Positions 16,503 through 28,924 of a stretch of DNA of 64,000 bases are shown here, piece by piece. Origin of the DNA: Hypanus sabinus. Lineage: Eukaryota. The first letter of the stretch is position 1. Each line of letters starts with the position of its first letter. The position numbers and the translations under genes were made by a program. The DNA is taken from positions 13,454,001 through 13,518,000 of the forward strand of contig NC_082730.1 in the NCBI RefSeq assembly GCF_030144855.1. The letters are read 5' to 3'. The notes under the pieces were generated by a model. It was not told the DNA's origin. It did no database searches and worked only from the letters and a program-made list of their open reading frames with translations.

Positions 16503-17176
16503 TGTAACGTTCTCCTTCGCGTGTACTAATAACGCCGAATTCAACGTCGAGATAAACCACAGTCAATGACACCAGATCGCAGTAAGATTAACCATTCACT
16601 GTTCACTCTTCACATTAACATATGGTGAAAACTGTTGATAAAACAATACAAGATTGATACAGTATTTGTTCCTTCCTTAATATCACATTTCAATTGTAAA
16701 TACTTGCAAAGGTGACTATAACTACATTACACTAAGGTGCAGTATACAGGCAGAGTTTACCTGCTCCATTGACTACTTTAAATACACTTCAATGCAAACT
16801 ATCCGCAACTCTTTAACTAACGAAAGCATAAACATTATCGACCGTCGTTACTTTTAACAGGATCGGCATTAACATCTTAGTTCAATATATCGATTATCTA
16901 TTAACTTACAGCGTTGCTCTCACTGTGATTTCTCATGCCTGCAAAACAACTTCTGCTCAGGTCTGCCTCGTGGTGAGCTCCCCACCCTCGCGTTGATCTC
17001 AAACCGGTATTTTCCCACAAGACGCGGCGAAACCGGATGTGACGTCATCGCATGCCGATATATTTTACATGCAATGAATATACTTTAAACACTTCTAATT
17101 CTAACTAGAAAACACTATCGAATGAATTACTAAGCGAAAATATTATAAACTAAATAACTGTCGTAAAGACGGCACA
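16503..17176 (-). repeat. 3' LTR of element 1 (674 bp)
   Basis: 7 substitutions and 1 indel versus 23287-23959 by eye; contains CRE TGACGTCA (17040-17047) next to an ETS-like ccggatgt. Confidence 0.97.
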
Positions 17177-17233
17177 CTCCCCGCTTGACCTTCGTAAGGT
17201 CATAATGAACAGAGTACAAACTTAGTCTCTTAA

Positions 17234-20200
17234 TCAGTCATTAGGTAGAAGTAGAATAACTTCTGTAACTGGCCTTTGGTAAATTTTCACATCGCCTTGG
17301 TCGGTAGTCTTCAATTTGATCTTCCTGACATGTCCATCCCCGCTAGGGAATGTAGCAGTGATTCTGGCCATTGGCCAGCTGTTGCGGGTGATCTGCTTGT
17401 CCCTGAGCAGGACTAAGTCTCCAACTTGAAGATTCCTGCGGGGTTCTGTCCACTTTTGTCTCTGTTGCAACAAGGGTAGATATTCCTGTCTCCAGCGAGA
17501 CCAGAACTGATTTGCCAGAGCCTGGACTTGTCTCCATTGCTTTCTGTACAAATCCTTGTCTGAGAAGTCTCCTGGTGGAGGAGGTGCTCCTGCCTTCTGT
17601 GTAAGGAGCATTGATGGCGAAAGGATGAAGGGGTTTTCTGGGTCAGAGGACACCGGCAGGAGTGGTCGTGAGTTCATAATGGCTGTGACCTCTGCCATTA
17701 GGGTGCACAGTACCTCGTGGGTCAATCGGGTGCGTTGCTGCAGAAACATTGAATCCAGAATTCTTCTGGCGATCCCAATCATCCGCTCCCATGCGCCTCC
17801 CATGTGGGAGGCGTGTGGTGTGTTGAACTCCCAGTTGCATCCCTGTTGACTGAGGTACCTTTGCACTGCTTTGTCCATCCCCAGCTTCTTTGATGCTCCT
17901 ACAAAGTTCGTGCCGCAATCAGATCTTAACTGTTTTGCAGAGCCTCTTATCGCAAAGAATCGCCTGAGAGCATTGATGCAGCTGGATGTATCCAAAGATT
18001 CGATGACCTCAATGTGTACCGCTCTTGAACTCATGCAGCTAAACATGATGGCCCACCGCTTGCTATTTGCTTGTCCTCCTCTGGTGCATCTCGTAGTGAT
18101 AGACCAGGGGCCGAATACGTCGAGTCCCACATTTGTAAAGGGAGGGCAGGCTTCAAGGCGCTCAGGTGGGAGGTCCGCCATGCGTTGAACTTCTAAACTG
18201 CCTTGTAGTTTCCTGCAGGTTACACATTTATGAAGTACCGAATTGATCAGTGTTTTACCTCCCAAGATCCACAGTCCCGCTGCTCTTATTGCTCCTTCGG
18301 TAAGGTGACAGCCCTGGTGCTTTACCTGTTCATGATAATGGCGGGCGAGCAGTAAGGATACATGGCTGCCTTTGGGCAGGAGTACTGGACTCTTTTCTGC
18401 GGCCGGAAGTTGGCAGTGTATTAACCGGCCTCCAATGCAGATGATATTGTTCTTCAGGATCGGGCTGAACTTCCTCAAAGGGCTGTCCTTTGGTATTGGT
18501 TTGTTGACTTGGAGAGCTGAAAACTCCCTTGCGAAAGCCGCTCTTTGCGTTGCTTTGAAGATGACGTCCTTTGCCTGGGCTAATTCGTCCGCGGTGCGAG
18601 GCAAAGTACATTTGTGCCATCCCCTACATTTACTGTTTCGGGATGAATGTTTGTGTGATCTGGCCATATGAATGAGGAACGCAAGTCCTCTCACTAAAGA
18701 ATTCAAAGTGGAGAACCGCCGAAAGCGTTCGTTGGTACGTATCGATTCTTCGAGGTAGGTGGCTCCTGTTTGTATTTGCGGCCGAATTTCCGAGTCTCTC
18801 TCGGGTTCGATCAGTTCAAATATCTCGTTCATTTGAGTCCTTTCTGATGGTGGCTGATGCAGAAAGGGGGGTCCGGTAAACCAGGTTGTCTGAGCCAGAC
18901 GGAATGCAGGTAAGGATCTTGATGCATGGTCTGCAGGGTTATCCTCGGTACGTACATAATGCCATTGTTCGGGTTTAGATGACAGGCGGATGCGTTGAAC
19001 TCTATTATGAACGTACACGTAGAAGCGTTTTGATTCGTTGTAAATATAACCAAGCACGACTTTACTGTCCGTGTAGAACTTGATATCGTCGAACCCTAGG
19101 TCCAGCTTGTCCTGGATAAGGTCTGCCATTTCCACGGCCAGGACGGCTGCGCACAGTTCAAGCCTTGGAATCGTCAGCTCCGACGGAGGAGTGAGCTTCG
19201 CTTTACCCGTTACGAATCCCACTTCGACTTGGCCGTCCTTTCCGACTACTTTCAAGTAAGCCACAGCGCCGATGGCCTTGGTGGACGCATCCGAAAAAAC
19301 ACACAATTCTGTGTGCCATGCCTCGGTGGGTGAGGTCACAGTGTACCTGCGTTGGATATGAAGCTGTTTTAAATCCGGGAGTGAAACTCTCCAAGCCTCC
19401 CACTTGCTTAGCTTGTCTTCAGGTAGGGGAGTATCCCAGTCAGTGGGCTCAGACGTAAGTTCTCTGAGAAGGGCTCTTCCTTGAATCGTAACTGGTGCCA
19501 GTAGACCCAAAGGATTGAAAATACTGTTGACAGTGGAGAGGACTCCACGGCGGGTAAATGGTTTGATCACGGTCGGCACAGAGAATGTGAACGAGTCGGT
19601 CGTTATCTCCCAGAGGAGACCCAAGCTCCTTTGTGTAGGCATGGTTTCTCCATCTAAATCTAGGTCTTTGATTGCTGGAGCACAGTCATCGTGTGGAAAA
19701 GCCTCCATTACTGCCTGACGGTTTGATGCAAACTTATGCAAGCGGAGGTTTGACTCCGCGAGTGAGGCTTGTGTACGTCGGAGCAGATCGATTGCTTCAT
19801 CTTCTGTCCGTAGTGATATCAAACCATCGTCGACGTAGAAGTGCCTTTCTACAAACTTAACGGTGTCGTCACCGTGCTCCTGTGCACCCTCTCTGATGGC
19901 TCTTCGCAGCCCATAGATGGCCACGGCAGGTGACGGACTATTGCCGAAAACGTGGACTTTCATCCGGTACTCGATAACTTCTTTGTTGATGTCGTTGTCC
20001 TTATACCATAAGAAACGGAGGAAATCACGATAGTCTTCCTGTACTAAGAAGCAATGGAACATCTGCTGGATGTCCGCTAAGATTGCGACCTTCTCCTTCC
20101 GGAAGCGCAGCAGGACCCCGAGTAGGGTATTGTTAAGGTCGGGGCCTGTGAGAAGCGCGTCATTTAGGGAGACGCCGGAACACTGGGCACTGGAGTCGAA

Positions 20201-22417
20201 GACCACCCTGATCTGATTGGGTTTTTGTGGATGGTAAACTCCAAATGTTGGGAGGTACCAGCACTCCCCGCCTTCCGGCAGTGGTGGTGCTACTTCGGCA
20301 TGTCCGTTAGCGAAGATCTTTCCCATAAATGCTATATATTGCTGTTGCGTCTCGGGTTTCCGGTTCAGGGTTTTTTGTAGGGACATGAACCGCTTGACCG
20401 CTTGCTCTTTGTTATTTGGCAAGCGCTGGCGTGGTTCTCTGAAGGGTAGTGGGGCGACCCAATTATTTGCTTCATCCCTGAAGACTTTGGTGTCCATCAT
20501 TTTTAAGAAGAAGACGTCTTGAGCTGATGGAGCAAGTTTATTGTCATACTTCGTTTGAGCGAAGACTGACTGGCCCAGCGACTCGTCGCTTGCCTCGCGC
20601 TTGTTAACGCCTTGTTGTGCTTCCTTGATATACATGGAACTTGTGCAGGGTTGAAAAATCGAATGGCGGCCACTCTCTAGCACATTGGTCTTGAGTGTGT
20701 CAACCGTCGGTTTGTGTACGTCACCGAGACACACCTCTCCTATCACCAACCAGCCCAGATCCAGACGTTGCGCGAAGGGGGCGTCGAGTGGTCCATTGAC
20801 CTGCTGCCTAACCTTGTGTACCTGGATAACATCTCTTCCTAATAGCAGGAGTATTTCCGCTTTTGGATCCAGTTCTGGGATGTGTTTGGCGATGTGGTGG
20901 AGATGTGGCTGGTGAAGCACCGCAGTTGGTGTTGGGATCTCAGTGCGGTTATTCATGATTTCATTGCACTCTAAGAGCGGAGGGAGACAGATGACGACTT
21001 TACCACCCAGGGACTTGATCTGGATGCCTTCTGCCTTCCTTCCTTGGGTTTCCATGTTGCCTGAGCAAGTTTTGAGGTAGTATGGGAACTGCTCACTCTC
21101 AATGTTGAACAATTTAAAGAACTCTGGACTGACTAGTGAGCGATTGCTCTGATCGTCCAGAATCACATAGGCTTTGATGGCCTTGTCTTTGGCTCCTTTA
21201 GGGTACACCTTAGTGAGGCAGATCTTGGAACAAGAACGGCTTGACTGAGCTTGACCGCAAACTTCTGTACAGTTCGTGCTGACAACTGTTGACCTAGAGT
21301 GAGCCTCTCCCTCCCTGCCGTCCTGTTGTGGGGGTGAAGGAGCGCCGTCGGTTTGCGGTGACAGGCCGGGATGCATGGCCCTGACGTGATCCGTGCTATC
21401 ACATTCCGGACACTTCACGGCGATCGTACACTCTCTGGCGAGGTGAGAGGTTGAGGAACAGCATCTAAAACATATTCTTTTCTCCTTGAGAAGGGCCGTC
21501 CTCTCTTCAAGGGGTTTTTCCCTAAACATTCTGCATCCTTTGAGGGGGTGAGGTTTGTTATGCAATGGACAATACTTACTAGGGTCGTTGTTAGTTGTAA
21601 GGGCTTCAGTCTTGAGCACTGAGACGGGTTTATCAATGTTGAAAACATTCGAGGAGGATCTACTTGGCTTGGTGTAAATCGTACTGCTTCCTGGACCCAC
21701 GAGGCTAGGGTCGTTTCGCTTCTTCGCCTCCCTGCACACAAACCTAGTGAGGAGCTCAAAGGGAGGAAATCGATCATCGTGCTCTTCCTTGTAATCTAAA
21801 GCAACGGACAGCCACCTGTCCTGCAGCCCAAAAGGAAGTTTGTCCACGACTTGTCTAATCCCGAATGGAGTATCTAGGTATACTAGACCAGCTGAGTAGC
21901 CATCTTCTTTGGCGCCTTGGATCTCCATGAGTAAATCTCCGAATTCTCTTAACTTAATGTGATCTTTGGCTGACACCTTAGGAAAGTTTTCCAGACGTCG
22001 ATATAGCGCCGCTTCAATAACTTCGGGGGACCCATAGCCCTCCCGAAGTCTCTCCCACGCTTTGCTTAAAGCTAGCTTGGGTTTGTTCATGTACACTGAA
22101 CGCATGCGTCTCACCTGTTCGCGTGATTCTTTTCCCAGCCATTTCGCCAGAAGGTCCAACTTTTGGGTTGCACTAAGCTGGACTCTGTCGATCATGTTGG
22201 TGAATGTTGAGTACCATGCACGGTAATTTTCAGGTTTATCATCAAACTGGTACAGTCCCGAAGTGACGAGATCCCGTCGTGCTAAATACTGCATCATGGG
22301 ATCGGCTGTAAGCGGCATGCAGGCTGGAGAAGTACGTTGGCGCCTATATGACTGAGAGTGTACGTTTCTCATGGAATTTGCCGTCCTGGATTCGACCTCT
22401 GCATCTCTTCGCATCAA
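17234..22417 (-). CDS. BEL/Pao Gag-Pol polyprotein (Gag core, 3 Zn knuckles, PR, RT, RNase H, IN), 1727 aa
   Basis: Knuckles CPLHNKPHPLKGC, CFRCCSSTSHLAREC, CPECDSTDHVRAMH; protease ILDDQSNRS; RT ADIQQMFH..FGNSPSP..FYVDDGL; RNase H VFSDAS..PRLELCAA..YTDS..NPAD; integrase HxxxxxH..CxxC, GLDVFGP, SDCGTNF, GAWERM. Confidence 0.97.
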   Translation of the reverse strand: MMRRDAEVESRTANSMRNVHSQSYRRQRTSPACMPLTADPMMQYLARRDLVTSGLYQFDDKPENYRAWYSTFTNMIDRVQLSATQKLDLLAKWLGKESREQVRRMRSVYMNKPKLALSKAWERLREGYGSPEVIEAALYRRLENFPKVSAKDHIKLREFGDLLMEIQGAKEDGYSAGLVYLDTPFGIRQVVDKLPFGLQDRWLSVALDYKEEHDDRFPPFELLTRFVCREAKKRNDPSLVGPGSSTIYTKPSRSSSNVFNIDKPVSVLKTEALTTNNDPSKYCPLHNKPHPLKGCRMFREKPLEERTALLKEKRICFRCCSSTSHLARECTIAVKCPECDSTDHVRAMHPGLSPQTDGAPSPPQQDGREGEAHSRSTVVSTNCTEVCGQAQSSRSCSKICLTKVYPKGAKDKAIKAYVILDDQSNRSLVSPEFFKLFNIESEQFPYYLKTCSGNMETQGRKAEGIQIKSLGGKVVICLPPLLECNEIMNNRTEIPTPTAVLHQPHLHHIAKHIPELDPKAEILLLLGRDVIQVHKVRQQVNGPLDAPFAQRLDLGWLVIGEVCLGDVHKPTVDTLKTNVLESGRHSIFQPCTSSMYIKEAQQGVNKREASDESLGQSVFAQTKYDNKLAPSAQDVFFLKMMDTKVFRDEANNWVAPLPFREPRQRLPNNKEQAVKRFMSLQKTLNRKPETQQQYIAFMGKIFANGHAEVAPPLPEGGECWYLPTFGVYHPQKPNQIRVVFDSSAQCSGVSLNDALLTGPDLNNTLLGVLLRFRKEKVAILADIQQMFHCFLVQEDYRDFLRFLWYKDNDINKEVIEYRMKVHVFGNSPSPAVAIYGLRRAIREGAQEHGDDTVKFVERHFYVDDGLISLRTEDEAIDLLRRTQASLAESNLRLHKFASNRQAVMEAFPHDDCAPAIKDLDLDGETMPTQRSLGLLWEITTDSFTFSVPTVIKPFTRRGVLSTVNSIFNPLGLLAPVTIQGRALLRELTSEPTDWDTPLPEDKLSKWEAWRVSLPDLKQLHIQRRYTVTSPTEAWHTELCVFSDASTKAIGAVAYLKVVGKDGQVEVGFVTGKAKLTPPSELTIPRLELCAAVLAVEMADLIQDKLDLGFDDIKFYTDSKVVLGYIYNESKRFYVYVHNRVQRIRLSSKPEQWHYVRTEDNPADHASRSLPAFRLAQTTWFTGPPFLHQPPSERTQMNEIFELIEPERDSEIRPQIQTGATYLEESIRTNERFRRFSTLNSLVRGLAFLIHMARSHKHSSRNSKCRGWHKCTLPRTADELAQAKDVIFKATQRAAFAREFSALQVNKPIPKDSPLRKFSPILKNNIICIGGRLIHCQLPAAEKSPVLLPKGSHVSLLLARHYHEQVKHQGCHLTEGAIRAAGLWILGGKTLINSVLHKCVTCRKLQGSLEVQRMADLPPERLEACPPFTNVGLDVFGPWSITTRCTRGGQANSKRWAIMFSCMSSRAVHIEVIESLDTSSCINALRRFFAIRGSAKQLRSDCGTNFVGASKKLGMDKAVQRYLSQQGCNWEFNTPHASHMGGAWERMIGIARRILDSMFLQQRTRLTHEVLCTLMAEVTAIMNSRPLLPVSSDPENPFILSPSMLLTQKAGAPPPPGDFSDKDLYRKQWRQVQALANQFWSRWRQEYLPLLQQRQKWTEPRRNLQVGDLVLLRDKQITRNSWPMARITATFPSGDGHVRKIKLKTTDQGDVKIYQRPVTEVILLLPND

Positions 22418-22609
22418 ACTTTGTAAGTTTGGTGTCGAGAAGTATCGGTTGTCAGCTCTTTCATTCTTGACTTCATCACAGAGTCGTGAGGGTAAATTTT
22501 TTTCCTCGTATGGATGTGATGCAATCGTGAATCTCTGAGGTTCCTCGTAGCTGGGGAAGTTATCGAATACGTATGGAGAGGGGAGACGAGCCTGCCTGTC
22601 TATTTGAGA

Positions 22610-23248
22610 TTATACATAGTCGCTTGTGCGTTCCAGTCTGGTCCTTTCTAAAGTAGATCTTACTTTGGTCAGATCACGCGACCCTTCAGCTTCTTCTATG
22701 TACTCTGCTTCCGCCATGGCAGCTTCTTCTTCTCTTTCTAGCTGCAGCACTTGCAACTCTGTCGATATTTTTGCCATTTCCAACTGGGTTTCGGCTTCTC
22801 TGGCGGCCGCTTCACTTTGTCTGGCGGCCTCTTCTCTTTGTCTGGCGGCCCTTTCCTTCTGGATTTCGGCTTCTCTGGCGGCCGCTTCTCTTTGTCTGGC
22901 GGCCCATTCCTTCTGGATTTCGGCTTCTCTGGCGGCAGCTTCACTTTGTCTGGCGGCCCTTTCCTTCTGGATTTTGGCTTCTCTGGTGGCCTGTTCCATT
23001 TTCAAAACTGCTTCTTGTCTGGCGTAACGCAGTCGCACCTTGGCGGCTTCTGCCTTGGCTCTTGCCTGGGTGGACTTACTTGATGCCGCTCTACTGCCCT
23101 TGTCGCTGGGCGCCATCGACTTGATCCCGGATTGAGCTGACATTGCAGCACTTGGAACACCTGATAACGCCTAGGTGGGCTTACTTGATGTCGGTTTACC
23201 ACCCTTGTCGCTGGGCAGCGTCGACTTGATGCTGGATCGAGCTGACAT
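22610..23248 (-). pseudogene. Gag N-terminal repeat/coiled-coil region of element 1, cut off by two nonsense codons
   Basis: In frame with 17234-22417. TAG at 23171-23173 and TAA at 22610-22612, where element 2 has CAG and CAA. Repaired ORF 23248->17234 would be 2004 aa. Confidence 0.9.
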
Positions 23249-23286
23249 TGCAGCACTTGAAACACCTGATAATGCCGCTTTTTCAC

Positions 23287-23959
23287 TGTAACGTTCTCCT
23301 TTGCGTGTACTAATAACGCCGAATTCAACGTCGAGATAAACCACAGTCAATGACACCAGATCGCAGTAAGATTAACCATTTACTGTTCACTCTTCACATT
23401 AACATATGGTGAAAACTGTTGATAAAACAATACAAGATTGATACAGTATTTGTTCCTTCCTTAATATCACATTTCAATTGTAAATACTTGCAAAGGTGAC
23501 TATAACTACATTACACTAAGGTGCAGTATACAGGCAGAGTTTACCTGCTCCATTGACTACTTTAAATACACTTCAATGCAAACTATCCGCAACTCTTTAA
23601 CTAACGAAAGCATAAACATTATCGACCGTCGTTACTTTTAACAGGATCGGCATTAACATCTTAGTTCAATATATCGATTATCTATTAACTTACAGCGTTG
23701 CTCTCACTGTGATTTCTCATGCCTGCAAAACAACTTTTGCTCAGGTGTGCCTCGTGGTGAGCCCCCACCCTCGCGTTAATTTCAAACCGGTACTTTCCCA
23801 CAAGACGCGGCGAAACCGGATGTGACGTCATCGCATGCCGATATATTTTACATGCAATGAATATACTTTAAACACTTCTAATTCTAACTAGAAAACACTA
23901 TCGAATGAATTACTAAGCGAAAATATTATAAACTAAATAACTGTCGTAAAGACGGCACA
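23287..23959 (-). repeat. 5' LTR of element 1 (673 bp)
   Basis: Near identical to 16503-17176; followed on the minus strand by gtgaaaaagcggca rather than a TGG-type PBS. Confidence 0.97.
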
Positions 23960-25059
23960 GTTTCCATGAGCTGTCTTTAAGTTGGTCACTTTATTTAGGT
24001 AATAGTGAAAGAAACCAGTTTCTCATTCTTCCTTAAAAAAATCAATTTATTTCTCAGCTCCCCAGCCATTCCACCACAGGCAATGACCCATACAGGAGTG
24101 TGTTGTAACAACCTCCACTCAGCTGATTGATGCATCTTCAAGAACGTTCCAGTTTCTCAACCATCACATACTAGACATTGTTTAACTTGATTTACATCCA
24201 TCATCCCCACACATTCCCTTCGTGCATGATAGACGCACTGTAACTGCACTCTCCTCAAAGTACCTGAATTTAATCTGTTCAGGGTTCTTCAACTTCCCAT
24301 GTGTTGCTGAAAAATATACCTGAATCTGAGGATCTTCTAGTTCACTGCTCTTGAACTCTGAGCAATAACCCCTTGCACAGAATACCAAGACCATGCAGAG
24401 AAGATATAACCATGAACTACTTTCTTGGAAAGGTAAACTATTTCCACTTCAATCAGAAATAATTATTTCCTTGTCCCCTGATTCCAAAAGAAAGACACCT
24501 TGCCTCCCTGTCCAACTCCAAGTCATTTTCTGAGTGCTTTTCTGGAAAGTGATCAGCTCTGTATACGCAATGCCCCGTCTAACCAATGTACCAAGTAGAA
24601 TTGAGTCTGGACAGGGCATTCAGTTCTGGGAAACTAACAACTAACAATATTTAATTGACCTTTTTGGGATGACAGGCAGCTCCAGCATTAGACAAGGCTA
24701 ACTCAGGCTGCTTCCTGATAGCCTGAAATGACATTGTTTCTGCTCTGGGCTCAGCATCAACATTATCTGATTCCAGCATCTCATAGAAGATTGGCCGGTC
24801 AGTTTTGGGAAGTGCAGCTGATATTGAACAGGCTCTGGGGTCTGGAGAGTCATTGCTGCTATATTGTCCTGATTTTGGTTCTTCAGCTGCAGCCTCACCA
24901 GTGATCCTCCTGGTCATCTGGCTCAACAGTTGTGAAATCACTTATCACCCATTCTATGGAGCTGGAGCTGTCCTGGTGATACAGAGACCTAACACACTGG
25001 TTTCACAGTAAAATTGACACTGTACTAACAAAATTCCAGTCAGAAAGAGATTATCCCTT

Positions 25060-28000
25060 TGTGCTGTCTTTACGACAGTTATTTAGTTTATAATATTTTC
25101 GCTTAGTAATTCATTCAATAGTATTTTCTAGTTAGAATTAGGAGTGTTTAAAGTGTATTCATTGCATGTAAAATATATTGGCATGCGATGACGTCACATC
25201 CGGTTTCGCCGCGTCTTGTGGGAAAACACCGGTTTGAAATTAGCGCGAGGGTGGGGGCTTTCCACGAGGCTCACCTGAGCAGAAGTTGTTTTGCAGGCAT
25301 GAGAAATCACAGTGAGAGCAACGCTGTAAGTTAATAGATAATCGATATATTGAACTAAGATGTTAATGCCGATCCTGTTAGAAGTAACGACGGTAGATAA
25401 TGTTTATGCTTTCGTTAGTTAAAGAGTCGCGGATAGTTTGCATGGAAGTGTATTTAAAGTAGTCAATGGAGCAGGTAAACTCTCCCTGTATACTGCACCT
25501 TAGTGTAATGTAGTTATAGTCACCTTTGCAAGTATTTACAATTGAAATGTGATATTAAGGAAGGAACAAATACTGTATCAATCTTGTATTGTTTTATCAA
25601 CAGTTTTCACCATATGTTAATGTGAAGAGTGAACAGTAAATGGTTAATCTTACTGCGATCTGGTTCTTATTAACTGGTTTATCTCGACGTTAAATTCGAC
25701 GTTATCAGTACACGCGAAGGAGAACATTACAGTGAAAAAGTGGCATTATCAGGTGTTTCAAGTGCTGCAATGTCAGCTCAATCCAGCATCAAGTCGACGC
25801 TGCCCAGCGACAAGGGCAGTAAACCGACATCAAGTAAGCCCACCCAGGCGTTATCAGGTGTTCCAAGTGCTGCAATGTCAGCTCGATCCGGGATCAAGTC
25901 GACGCCGCCCAGCGACAAGGGCAGTAAACCGACATCAAGTAAGCCCACCCAGGCGTTATCAGGTGTTCCAAGTGCTGCAATGTCAGCTCGATCCGGGATC
26001 AAGTCGATGGCGCCCAGCGACAAGGGCAGTAGAACGACATCAAGTAAGTCCACCCAGGCAAGAGCCAAGGCAGAAGCCGCCAAGGTGCGACTGCATTACA
26101 CCAAACAAGAAGCAGTTTTGAAAATGAAACAGGCCACCAGAGAAGCCGAAATCCAGAAAGAAAGGGCCGCCAGAGAAGCCGAAAAGGCTGCCAGACAAAG
26201 AGAAGAGGCCGCCAGAGAAGCCGAAACCCAGTTGGAAATGACAAAAATATCGACAGAGTTGCAAGTGCTGCAGCTAGAAAGAGAAGAAGAAGCTGCCATG
26301 GCGGAAGCGGAGTACATAGAAGAAGCTGAAGGGTCGCGTGATCTGACCGCAGCAAGATCTACTTTAGAAAGGACCAGACTGGAACGCACAAGCGACTATG
26401 TACAATCTCAAATAGACAGGCAGGCTCGTCCCCCCTCTCCATACCTATTCGATAACTTCCCCAGCTACGAGGAACCTCAGAGAGTCACGATTGCATCACA
26501 TCCATACGAGGAAGGAAATTTACCCTCACGGCTCCGTGATGAAGTCAAGAATGAAAGAACCGACAACGCTCCTTCACCCCCACAACAGGACGGCGGGGAG
26601 GGAGAGGTTCACTCCAGGACAACAATTGTCAGCTCGAACTGTACAGAAGTTTGCGGTCAAACTCAGTCAAGCCGTTCTTGTTCCGAGATCTGCCTCACTG
26701 AGGTGTACCCTAAAGAAGCACAACAAGACATTACCAAGTGTAAAGCAACCGATGAGACGCTAGGTCAGTCAGTTTTCGTTCAAACTGAGCACGGAAACAA
26801 ACTTGCACAATCAGCTCAAGATACCATTTCTTTAAGACCCAAAGACACCAAGGTCTTCAGAGATGGAGCAAATAATGGGGTTGCCCCATTGCCTATCAGA
26901 GAACCATGCCAGCGCTCACCAGATAACAAAGAGCAGGCAGTCAAACGGTTCACGTCCTTACGGAAAACCCGGAAAAGGAAACCTGAGATGCAGCAACACA
27001 CCCGATTGGCCCACGAGGTACTGTGCACCCTAATGGCACAGGTCACAGCCATTATAAACGCACAATCATTCCTACCTGTGTCTTCTGACCCAGAAAACCC
27101 CTTTATACTTTCGCCATCAACGCTCCTTACGCAGAAGGCAGGAGCACCTCCTCCACCAGGAGACTTCTCAGACAAGGATTTGTACACAAAGCAATGGAGA
27201 CAAGGCCAGGCTCTGGCAAATCAGTTCTGGCCTCGCTGGAGACAAAAATATCTACCTTTGTTGCAACAGAGACAAAAGTGGACAGGACCCCACAGGAATC
27301 TGGCCAACGGCCAGAATCACTGCTACATTCCCTAGCGGGGATGGACATGTCAGGAAGATCGAATTGAAGACTACCGACCAAGGCGATGTGAAAATTTACC
27401 AAGGGCCAGTTACAGAAGTTATTCTACTTCTACCCAATGACTGATTAAGAGACTAAGTTTTGTACTCTGCTCATTGTGACCTTACGAAGGTCAAGTGGGG
27501 AGTGTGCTGTCTTTACGACAGTTATTTAGTTTATAATATTTTCGCTTAGTAATTCATTCAATAGTATTTTCTAGTTAGAATTAGGAGTGTTTAAAGTGTA
27601 TTCATTGCATGTAAAATATATCGGCATGCGATGACGTCACATCCGGTTTCGCCGCGTCTTGTGGGAAAACACCGGTTTGAAATTAGCGCGAGGGTGGGGG
27701 CTTTCCACGAGGCTCACCTGAGCAGAAGCAGTTTTGCAGGCATGAGAAATCACAGTGAGAGCAACGCTGTAAGTTAATAGATAATCGATATATTGAACTA
27801 AGATGTTAATGCCGATCCTGTTAGAAGTAACGACGGTAGATAATGTTTATGCTTTCGTTAGTTAAAGAGTCGCGGATAGTTTGCATGGAAGTGTATTTAA
27901 AGTAGTCAATGGAGCAGGTAAACTCTCCCTGTATACTGCACCTTAGTGTAATGTAGTTATAGTCACCTTTGCAAGTATTTACACTTGAAATGTGATATTA

Positions 28001-28174
28001 AGGAAGGAACAAATACTGTATCAATCTTGTATTGTTTTATCAACAGTTTTCACCATATGTTAATGTGAAGAGTGAACAGTAAATGGTTAATCTTACTGTG
28101 ATCTGGTTCTTATTAACTGGTTTATCTCGACGTTAAATTCGACGTTATCAGTACACGCGAAGGAGAACGTTACA
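25060..28174 (+). mobile_element. Non-autonomous, internally deleted BEL/Pao element (element 2)
   Basis: 672-bp LTRs at 25060-25731 and 27503-28174 (6 substitutions by eye), perfect 5-bp TSD ccctt (25055-59 / 28175-79), PPT gtcaagtggggag; interior is a mosaic of element-1 segments. Confidence 0.97.
25770..27335 (+). CDS. Mosaic ORF of element 2 (~521 aa from first ATG): Gag N-terminus plus inter-domain linkers plus IN C-terminal part
   Basis: No stops. Aligns to four separated blocks of the element-1 polyprotein joined by three in-frame deletions; a fourth, 53-nt deletion shifts the frame 10 codons before the stop. Confidence 0.7.
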   Translation: MSAQSSIKSTLPSDKGSKPTSSKPTQALSGVPSAAMSARSGIKSTPPSDKGSKPTSSKPTQALSGVPSAAMSARSGIKSMAPSDKGSRTTSSKSTQARAKAEAAKVRLHYTKQEAVLKMKQATREAEIQKERAAREAEKAARQREEAAREAETQLEMTKISTELQVLQLEREEEAAMAEAEYIEEAEGSRDLTAARSTLERTRLERTSDYVQSQIDRQARPPSPYLFDNFPSYEEPQRVTIASHPYEEGNLPSRLRDEVKNERTDNAPSPPQQDGGEGEVHSRTTIVSSNCTEVCGQTQSSRSCSEICLTEVYPKEAQQDITKCKATDETLGQSVFVQTEHGNKLAQSAQDTISLRPKDTKVFRDGANNGVAPLPIREPCQRSPDNKEQAVKRFTSLRKTRKRKPEMQQHTRLAHEVLCTLMAQVTAIINAQSFLPVSSDPENPFILSPSTLLTQKAGAPPPPGDFSDKDLYTKQWRQGQALANQFWPRWRQKYLPLLQQRQKWTGPHRNLANGQNHCYIP

Positions 28175-28924
28175 CCCTTACAATATGGGGCACTTGGCAT
28201 CTCTTGAAGCTCTGAAATGTATGGAAACTTCCAGTTCTGGGCCCCTGATCAACTCTAACTGATACCTTCCATGGCCCAGAACCTGAGCTCTTGGAATTCC
28301 TTCCCTGCAGCTCTCTGGCTCTCTCTTTCATTCTCACTATAAATGCTTGTTAAATCCCACCTGATTGTTTTTGGTCGCATGTGACTCCATGACAAAAATT
28401 GTCAGACAATGTTACTGTGAAGGGACTTCAGTCTTTACCATGACATTCTAGGTGGTACGGAAATGAAATCCATTGTTGTTTGATTACAAATTATTGTTCA
28501 AACTTCACAAAATCCAGTCACTGTATTCACTCCAGATTAATTTGACTAGCATCATTTGCTTTGGTTGCATTGGATTTTACAAAGTATTACAGTCAAAATG
28601 GAAATTAATGCATCATCTTGAGAGCAGCTTGTGAGATTGATCAAAACACACACAAAATGCCTGCAGGAACCTGTCAGGTCAGGCAGCATCAATGGAGGGG
28701 AACGGTCAAATTTCTGGCTGAGAGACTTCATTGATCTCATGCTGAAATATCAACCCTTTATTTCTCTCTGTAGATGCTGCCTGACCTGCTGAGTTCATCC
28801 AGCATTTTGCGAGTGCTACTCTGCATTTCCAGCACCTGAAGAATCCCCTGTGTTCAAGTCAGTTGTTCGGGTGATTTTCTGGATCTTAAGCAGTGTCTGC
28901 AAACACTGCACTGATCTATCCGTG

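What the first reader, a model, noticed from the sequence alone, without database searches (positions are those of the whole stretch)
25060..28174. Non-autonomous BEL satellite that deleted every enzymatic domain yet keeps a continuous ~521-aa ORF
Seen: relative to element 1, three large deletions remove (1) Gag core plus Zn knuckles, (2) protease, (3) RT, RNase H and IN core. Each joins in frame at short microhomologies (GAC; AA(A/G)G(G/A)AGC; CAGCAA), and a fourth 53-nt deletion shifts the frame only 10 codons before the end. Retained blocks carry many amino-acid changes (NNWVAP>NNGVAP, FFLKMMD>ISLRPKD) but no stop. The LTRs are about 99% identical with a perfect CCCTT TSD, so the already-deleted form most likely transposed recently. 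Three in-frame joins have about a 1/27 chance if random. Inference: selection for an open frame, either for RNA stability or packaging, or for a linker-only protein that hijacks or restricts the helper. I do not know of a described BEL/Pao system like this.
Basis: partly seen in the sequence, partly recalled or inferred. Interest (0 to 1): 0.75.

Follow-up and report, generated by a model that had tools for sequence, protein, structure and literature searches.

The report
Enzyme-less stingray BEL/Pao hitch-hiker element
This is one young copy of an abundant Atlantic-stingray jumping-gene family that lost its capsid core and all its enzymes through stepwise in-frame deletions and must borrow them from full-length relatives; about a hundred copies share its long open reading frame, but nothing yet shows that the frame or its protein is selected.

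Summary
Window 25060-28174 (+) is a 3115-nt LTR element with 672-nt LTRs (666/672 identical) and a CCCTT target-site duplication. Compared with the 7.5-kb BEL/Pao element next door (16503-23959, minus strand) it lacks 1104, 573 and 2607 nt, all in frame, plus 53 nt that shift the frame 10 codons before the stop. The ORF is 521 aa.

It is not a one-off. The genome is Hypanus sabinus, and about 100 annotated proteins carry the same junctions. Ten fetched loci have the junctions identical to the base, each with its own 5-bp duplication and LTRs 98-100% identical.

Intermediates exist, giving a reduction series:
- RT-to-integrase-core deletion only;
- plus the Gag-core deletion;
- plus the protease deletion.

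The first junction is also present, base for base, in Hemitrygon akajei.

Selection for the frame is not shown. Within-family pN/pS is about 0.65, and shared and private variants do not differ. The window copy had about a 50% chance of staying open since insertion. Forms recombine, and gene models over-represent open copies.

Other windows of this scan already found this family. Verdict: an ordinary non-autonomous LTR retrotransposon family with an unusual but unproven coding feature.

The parts
25055..25059 (+). 5' target-site duplication, CCCTT
   Evidence: the same pentamer lies at 28175-28179
25060..25731 (+). 5' LTR, 672 nt, TGT...ACA ends
   Evidence: 666/672 identical to the 3' LTR; about 95% identical to the LTRs of element 1
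25732..25760 (+). Primer-binding region, presumed; a TGG lies 10 nt after the LTR; primer not identified
   Evidence: no complementarity of 8 nt or more to the LTR, so no self-priming signature in this copy; assignment by position only
25742..26056 (+). Three tandem 105-nt (35-aa) repeats spanning the start of the ORF; each unit carries an in-frame ATG
   Evidence: family D13, 90-94% identical units; other family members have one or two units
25770..27335 (+). 521-aa ORF plus stop. Order: Ser/Thr/Pro/Lys-rich repeats, Glu/Arg/Ala-rich coiled-coil-like region (the Gag N-terminal part), the stretch after the zinc knuckle, the stretch before RT, the integrase C-terminal part with the first half of DUF5641
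26557..26558 (+). Junction A: 1104 nt missing (Gag core DUF1759 and the CCHC knuckle), in frame
   Evidence: identical in 9 other fetched loci
26714..26715 (+). Junction B: 573 nt missing (retropepsin-like segment), in frame
   Evidence: identical in 7 other fetched loci; absent from L002, L004, L005 and L006
26715..26988 (+). Retained block just upstream of RT; only 78% identical to element 1; residues invariant in autonomous BEL/Pao elements are replaced
26988..26989 (+). Junction C: 2607 nt missing (RT, RNase H region, integrase zinc finger and core), in frame; oldest junction
   Evidence: identical in all 11 fetched loci, including Hemitrygon akajei L005
27299..27300 (+). Junction D: 53 nt missing inside DUF5641; frameshift, 10 codons, then a stop
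   Evidence: shared with L009 and with L002, a form that keeps the protease; 12 other gene models (9 three-deletion, 3 protease-keeping) have the same tail
27486..27502 (+). Purine-rich tract abutting the 3' LTR (polypurine-tract candidate)
   Evidence: read directly; function inferred
27503..28174 (+). 3' LTR
28175..28179 (+). 3' target-site duplication, CCCTT
16503..23959 (-). Element 1: near-complete BEL/Pao relative, the reference for the deletions. One frame of 186 + 1791 codons is interrupted by a single stop at 22610-22612
   Evidence: LTR pair 666/673 identical

Best explanation
The element is one recently inserted copy of an abundant, recently active non-autonomous BEL/Pao LTR-retrotransposon family of Hypanus sabinus.

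The family arose by successive internal deletions, probably template switches during reverse transcription. The order was: first RT to integrase core (junction C, old enough to be shared with Hemitrygon akajei), then the Gag core (A), then the protease (B). A subset, including this copy, also has a 53-nt frameshifting deletion (D).

The element keeps the LTRs, the region next to the 5' LTR, a polypurine tract and about 1.7 kb of internal sequence. It encodes no capsid core, nucleocapsid knuckle, protease, RT, RNase H or integrase core. It must therefore be transcribed from its LTR, then packaged, reverse-transcribed and integrated by proteins of full-length relatives.

The long ORF is a family trait inherited from three in-frame deletions. 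In individual copies it is still open mainly because they are young, and because the forms keep recombining with each other and with coding relatives. The amino-acid sequence is not under detectable constraint.

Shown: structure, shared junctions, independent insertions, recombination between forms, near-neutral substitution pattern. Inferred: mobilisation in trans, the deletion mechanism, and the absence of selection on the frame.
For: - Structure and target-site duplication.
- Element 1 is BEL/Pao by Pfam (Peptidase_A17, DUF1759, RVT_1, rve, DUF5641). The window ORF keeps only the first half of DUF5641.
- Family size: about 90 H. sabinus proteins of 470-640 aa match over about 91% of the query, and 101 of 133 retrieved proteins carry the junction-B peptide.
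- Independent insertions: ten H. sabinus loci and one H. akajei locus hold complete two-LTR elements, each with its own 5-bp duplication and LTR identity of 97.8-100%. Junction sequences are identical to the base.
- Nested series: C only (L004, L005), A+C (L002, L006), A+B+C (8 copies).
- Recombination: deletion D occurs on backgrounds with and without deletion B. Two haplotypes of the B-C block are shared across forms; L007 and L002 are 99.6% identical there against 90-92% for L007 versus other short copies.
- Near neutrality: pooled pN/pS is 0.65. Private variants are 43 N: 25 S and shared variants 36 N: 15 S (Fisher p = 0.44).
- Expected breaking events in this ORF since insertion are about 0.64, so the probability of still being open is about 0.53.
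- Frame-truncating lesions near the 3' end have spread to several loci.
Against: - Three of three large deletions are in frame (1/27 if random, although noticed post hoc).
- The junction-C lineage is old (dS 0.2-0.5 between the H. sabinus and H. akajei copies), yet open frames are still common, including a 1113-codon frame in L004.
- Mean pairwise distance among family ORFs (3.3%) is about six times the mean LTR-LTR divergence (0.55%). Most of the diversity therefore arose in replicating lineages, which without any filter should have picked up stops.
- All three lesions seen at two or more loci lie in the last 86 codons.
- No intact helper was found among the gene models.
Confidence: 0.6

Rival explanations
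1. An uninterrupted frame is itself selected in the replicating lineages at the RNA or translation level, without constraint on the residues. BEL/Pao RNA is normally translated almost to its 3' LTR. An out-of-frame deletion or early stop would leave a long untranslated tail, which could expose the RNA to nonsense-mediated decay, or could uncouple translation from packaging. Only frame-preserving derivatives would then be copied efficiently.
For: - Three of three large deletions are in frame.
- Propagated truncations remove at most 86 codons, so they lengthen the 3' untranslated part only slightly.
- Pairwise ORF diversity of 3.3% far exceeds post-insertion divergence, yet about 85% of annotated copies are fully open.
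- The B-C block lost residues invariant in autonomous elements but kept its frame in all 12 copies examined.
- There is a precedent: unspliced Rous sarcoma virus RNA is subject to nonsense-mediated decay when gag is truncated (PMC2925335).
Against: - The position test is not significant: 3 of 3 propagated lesions are late against 5 of 11 private ones (one-sided p = 0.15).
- All sister copies were reached through predicted proteins, so broken copies are under-sampled.
- Recombination with coding relatives can refresh the frame without selection on the short element.
- Many successful non-autonomous LTR elements (LARD, TRIM, ETn) have no ORF at all (own knowledge; PMC4350172 reviews the plant cases).
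Confidence: 0.27
2. The fusion protein (Gag N-terminal repeats and coiled coil, two linker stretches, integrase C-terminal domain) is functional. It would either join helper particles through the shared Gag N-terminal region and bring its own RNA along, or act as a dominant-negative restrictor of the helper.
For: - The Gag N-terminal region is kept in every deletion form, and most family members keep a complete DUF5641 (72 of 89 models with junctions B and C end at the native C-terminus).
- Gag fragments that restrict their parents are known elsewhere (Ty1 p22, Fv1, enJS56A1; own knowledge).
Against: - pN/pS is about 0.65 overall and 0.64-1.24 for the window copy against the others. Shared variants are no more conservative than private ones.
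- The window copy and at least 12 gene models lack half of DUF5641 and still spread.
- Repeat number and coiled-coil length vary freely, giving proteins of 483-642 aa.
- The retained 5' region may simply be the RNA packaging signal.
- No expression or protein data could be consulted.
Confidence: 0.08
3. The deletions happened after insertion in this one copy, or are an assembly artefact, so nothing about them was ever transposed.
For: None found.
Against: Identical junctions occur at ten other loci on different chromosomes, each with its own target-site duplication and matching LTR pair. About 100 gene models carry the junction peptides.
Confidence: 0.01

Closest known systems
Non-autonomous LTR retrotransposons made by internal deletion and mobilised in trans (plant LARD and TRIM elements; Dasheng with RIRE2; mouse ETn with MusD)
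   Same: Two LTRs, target-site duplication, replication signals kept, enzymes missing, more copies than the autonomous partner, dependence on a related helper.
   Different: Those elements usually have no long ORF. This family keeps one continuous frame made of leftover pieces of gag-pol. It belongs to BEL/Pao in a cartilaginous fish, and my literature searches found no described non-autonomous family for that combination.
TR-GAG elements and BARE-2 of plants (PMC4350172; PMC3735527)
   Same: Short non-autonomous LTR elements that still carry a coding frame and parasitise an autonomous relative.
   Different: TR-GAG keeps a complete GAG with capsid and knuckle. BARE-2 keeps pol but cannot make GAG. 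Here the Gag core and knuckle are exactly what junction A removed, and pol is reduced to fragments.
Dependence of Rous sarcoma virus unspliced RNA on correct gag termination (nonsense-mediated decay and the RNA stability element, PMC2925335, PMC5580461)
   Same: Gives a known mechanism by which a retroelement RNA with an early stop is lost, which would favour frame-preserving deletions.
   Different: Shown for an avian retrovirus whose gag stop is followed by a protective element. Nothing of the kind has been tested for BEL/Pao or in elasmobranchs.
Gag-derived inhibitors (Ty1 p22, mouse Fv1, sheep enJS56A1; own knowledge)
   Same: Truncated or altered Gag proteins encoded by defective copies can interfere with the intact element.
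   Different: Those proteins keep the capsid part that contacts the target. This ORF lacks the Gag core and shows no sequence constraint.

Membership tests
BEL/Pao LTR retrotransposon (Belpaoviridae), as a derivative | Single gag-pol frame in the order Gag, protease, RT, RNase H, integrase, with Pfam Peptidase_A17, DUF1759 and DUF5641 | tested here: met
   Met by element 1 (motifs). The window copy is 93-97% identical in nucleotides to element 1 over most retained blocks (78% in the B-C block) and keeps the first half of DUF5641.
BEL/Pao LTR retrotransposon (Belpaoviridae), as a derivative | LTRs with TG..CA ends and a short target-site duplication | tested here: met
   a 5-bp duplication in all 12 copies examined
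Non-autonomous LTR retrotransposon family | Lacks RT, RNase H, integrase core, protease and capsid | tested here: met
Non-autonomous LTR retrotransposon family | The deleted form itself transposed: same internal junctions at independent loci with different target-site duplications | tested here: met
Non-autonomous LTR retrotransposon family | Primer-binding site and polypurine tract kept | tested here: inconclusive
   A purine-rich tract abuts the 3' LTR. The primer was not identified, and no self-priming complementarity of 8 nt or more was found.
Non-autonomous LTR retrotransposon family | A competent helper with matching LTRs exists in the same genome | tested here: inconclusive
   Related full-length elements exist. 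Element 1 has LTRs 95% identical to the window copy, but its frame carries a stop. The only other H. sabinus RT-containing model of 985 aa or more is N-terminally truncated. Gene models are not a census.
TR-GAG type element | Single ORF encoding a complete GAG (capsid plus nucleocapsid knuckle) | tested here: not met
   DUF1759 and the CCHC knuckle lie inside deletion A
Domesticated retroelement gene | Single or few copies without LTRs, under purifying selection | tested here: not met
   About 100 LTR-flanked copies; pN/pS about 0.65 with no difference between shared and private variants

The most novel reading that the evidence does not exclude
Frame integrity, not protein sequence, is what lets a BEL/Pao deletion derivative keep replicating. 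Only derivatives translated almost to the 3' LTR escape RNA surveillance or stay coupled to packaging. That would explain why this lineage shrank three times in frame over a period longer than the Hypanus-Hemitrygon split and tolerates frameshifts only in its last ~90 codons.
Probability: 0.3. Interest if true: 0.7.

Novelty: new member of a known kind. Interest (0 to 1): 0.35.

Why it matters
If the frame is only a by-product, this is a clean, well-dated example of stepwise reduction of an LTR retrotransposon into a parasite of its relatives. All intermediates are still present, and the first step is shared by two stingray genera. That is useful for annotating the roughly one hundred 'plectin-like' and 'uncharacterized' H. 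sabinus gene models that are really this element.

If the frame is selected, the family would be a natural experiment on how translation or RNA surveillance constrains retroelement genomes, with dozens of natural open and truncated variants to compare.

Tried and rejected
- Flanks of the 11 fetched loci (about 200 kb) were scanned with element 1 for unannotated, possibly broken copies. None was found, so no unbiased sample was obtained.
- Equal lengths among N-terminally truncated models suggested propagated early lesions. However, P0130 is identical over 363 aa to the intact P0024 and differs from P0132 by 7 residues, so those lesions look private.
- Position test of propagated versus private truncations: first count p = 0.03. 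After checking lesion positions, several 'shared' tails turned out to be different frameshifts into the same frame. The corrected count gives p = 0.15, which is inconclusive.
- The low identity of the B-C block first looked like neutral drift. Codon analysis shows about half the differences are synonymous (dS 0.75, dN 0.16), so element 1 is simply a distant relative there. A three-branch split of these values was judged unreliable because of recombination and is not used.
- Literature searches for a described non-autonomous BEL/Pao family, or for H. sabinus transposon work on it, gave nothing specific; one search was rejected for syntax.
- Gene model P0001 does not match a straight translation of its locus. 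It skips 39 codons of the repeat, while the straight frame is open for 582 codons. I did not search the spliced model.
- One look-up failed for lack of a free slot and was repeated.
Full report
WHAT IS THERE

Window 25060-28174 (+) is a complete two-LTR element of 3115 nt.
- The LTRs (25060-25731 and 27503-28174) start TGT and end ACA. They differ at 6 of 672 positions, with no gaps.
- CCCTT flanks both ends.
- A purine-rich tract (27486-27502) abuts the 3' LTR.
- One frame is open from 25674 to 27332. From the ATG at 25770 it gives 521 aa.
- Pfam finds only the first 42 positions of DUF5641 near the C-terminus.

The neighbouring 7.5-kb element on the minus strand (16503-23959, 'element 1') is a BEL/Pao element by Pfam: Peptidase_A17, DUF1759, RVT_1, rve and DUF5641. 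Its frame is interrupted by one stop at 22610-22612.

THE DELETIONS

A global alignment of the two elements shows that the short one lacks 1104, 573 and 2607 nt, all multiples of three. It also lacks 53 nt, which shifts the frame 10 codons before the stop. In addition it has one extra unit of a 105-nt tandem repeat that spans the start codon, and it lacks 75 + 33 nt in a repetitive coiled-coil region.

In element 1 the deleted parts hold the following:
- DUF1759 and the CCHC knuckle;
- a retropepsin-like stretch;
- the YVDD reverse transcriptase, the Peptidase_A17 region, the HHCC finger and the integrase core.

IT IS A FAMILY, NOT A ONE-OFF

A protein search with the ORF identified the genome as Hypanus sabinus. 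It returned about 90 clusters of predicted proteins of 470-640 aa that cover about 91% of the query. Cluster look-up added 40 more.
- Of the 133 H. sabinus proteins, 101 carry the peptide that spans junction B.
- 89 carry both the B and C peptides. Of those 89, 77 run from the family's N-terminus to the native end or to the deletion-D frameshifted tail.

I fetched the DNA of ten H. sabinus loci and one Hemitrygon akajei locus. Every one is a complete element with its own 5-bp target-site duplication and an LTR pair 97.8-100% identical.

The junctions are identical to the base:
- A, B and C in seven loci plus the window copy;
- A and C, with the protease segment kept, in L002 and L006;
- C alone in L004.

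The H. akajei element L005 is about 84% identical overall and has the same junction C. It also shares a derived Trp-to-Gly change in the block beside that junction.

By nesting, the order was C, then A, then B. C predates the separation of the lineages now found in the two genera. This is an inference; horizontal transfer is not excluded.

RECOMBINATION BETWEEN FORMS

- The 53-nt deletion has the same junction in the window copy, in L009, and in L002, which keeps the protease.
- The block between junctions B and C exists as two haplotypes that cut across the forms.
- That block is only 78% identical to element 1, against 93-97% elsewhere. About half of the differences are synonymous (dS 0.75, dN 0.16). 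Forms that keep the protease already carry the divergent version.
- Element 1 is therefore a relative, not the parent.
- In that block the family has replaced residues that are invariant in autonomous BEL/Pao elements from a starfish to a frog. This fits loss of function of the stretch once RT was gone.

IS THE OPEN FRAME SELECTED?

Evidence against a need for selection:
- Across 1074 aligned coding sites in ten copies, pooled pN/pS is 0.65. For the window copy against each of the others it is 0.64-1.24.
- Variants private to one copy (43 non-synonymous, 25 synonymous) and variants shared by several copies (36 and 15) do not differ (p = 0.44). Changes made in replicating lineages are therefore no more conservative than post-insertion decay.
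- From its LTR divergence, the window copy is expected to have suffered about 0.64 frame-breaking events, so it had about a 53% chance of staying open.
- Truncating lesions near the 3' end have spread.

Evidence that keeps the question open:
- Three of three large deletions are in frame.
- Pairwise ORF diversity (3.3%) is about six times the mean LTR-LTR divergence.
- The junction-C lineage is old, yet long frames persist, including 1113 codons in L004.
- All three lesions seen at two or more loci remove at most 86 codons. However, 5 of 11 private ones do too (p = 0.15).

Two things blunt these points. Recombination with coding relatives can refresh the frame. And every sister copy was reached through a predicted protein, so broken copies, which annotation pipelines tend to call pseudogenes, are under-sampled. 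No unannotated copy lay in the roughly 200 kb of flanks.

HELPER

A search with the RT region of element 1 found only one H. sabinus protein of 985 aa or more. It is an N-terminally truncated relative of element 1. An intact helper was therefore not seen, though gene models are not a census.

MECHANISM

The element most likely works as a non-autonomous LTR retrotransposon. It would be transcribed from the 5' LTR, then packaged, reverse-transcribed and integrated by proteins of full-length BEL/Pao relatives.

I put about 0.6 on the reading that the frame is an inherited by-product, about 0.27 on selection for an uninterrupted frame at the RNA or translation level, and under 0.1 on a functional fusion protein. 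The precedent for the second reading is Rous sarcoma virus RNA and nonsense-mediated decay (PMC2925335).

KNOWN RELATIVES AND NOVELTY

The kind is known: internally deleted, trans-mobilised LTR elements, and coding ones such as TR-GAG and BARE-2 (PMC4350172, PMC3735527). A TR-GAG assignment fails because the Gag core is deleted. I found no paper describing such a family for BEL/Pao or for elasmobranchs.

Other windows of this same genome had already been flagged for the same family (s1-187771, s1-187790, s1-189553, s1-231688, s1-207066). Their follow-ups reached a similar verdict. My tests agree and add the following:
- base-level identity of the junctions;
- the shared junction C in H. akajei;
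- the evidence for recombination;
- the comparison of shared and private variants.

CAUTIONS FOLLOWED

The stop in element 1 is located but not otherwise discussed. The spliced model P0001 was not searched.

Noticed in passing
window 16503-23959 (-): Near-complete BEL/Pao element with an LTR pair 666/673 identical and a 186 + 1791-codon frame broken by a single stop at 22610-22612. Its flanking pentamers differ at one base (GAAAC / GACAC). It lies 1.1 kb from the short element, in the opposite orientation.
   Followed up: partly
window 25742-26056; L001-L011 just after the 5' LTR: A 105-nt tandem repeat begins 10 nt after the 5' LTR and each unit carries an in-frame ATG. Copy number varies from one to three among family members, so the N-terminus of the ORF varies in steps of 35 aa.
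   Followed up: partly
P0165-P0170 and others, against element 1: Teleost BEL/Pao polyproteins (Sebastes, Pangasianodon, Danio, Labeo) are 76-80% identical to the stingray element over 500 aa of the RT region, and 68% over the whole 1975-aa polyprotein. That is high for lineages separated since the cartilaginous-bony fish split, so horizontal transfer is possible.
   Followed up: no
P0110 (Hemitrygon akajei gene model, 527 aa): The model joins about 235 aa of the BEL/Pao Gag N-terminal region (52% identical to the window ORF) to a PRY/SPRY domain. It is either a chimeric annotation or a Gag-SPRY fusion of the kind seen in restriction factors.
   Followed up: partly
L006 9375-9963 and 12236-12877; L007 9459-9857 and 11717-12115: Two family copies have shortened LTRs. 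In L007 both LTRs are 399 nt, so that LTR-internal deletion was also propagated through transposition. In L006 the two LTRs differ in length (589 and 642 nt).
   Followed up: no
one search hit list: Only one H. sabinus RT-containing protein model of 985 aa or more (P0164) was found, against more than 100 models of the enzyme-less form. The 1791-codon frame of element 1 is itself not among the models.
   Followed up: partly
L011 20379-21914: A TRIM-like gene (RING, B-box, PRY/SPRY) lies 8 kb downstream of one family copy.
   Followed up: no
window 33000-54000: Several families of 130-300-nt direct repeats at 65-90% identity (D1-D5, D9, D10). They coincide with the Ig-domain receptor exon duplications noted by others on this window.
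   Followed up: no
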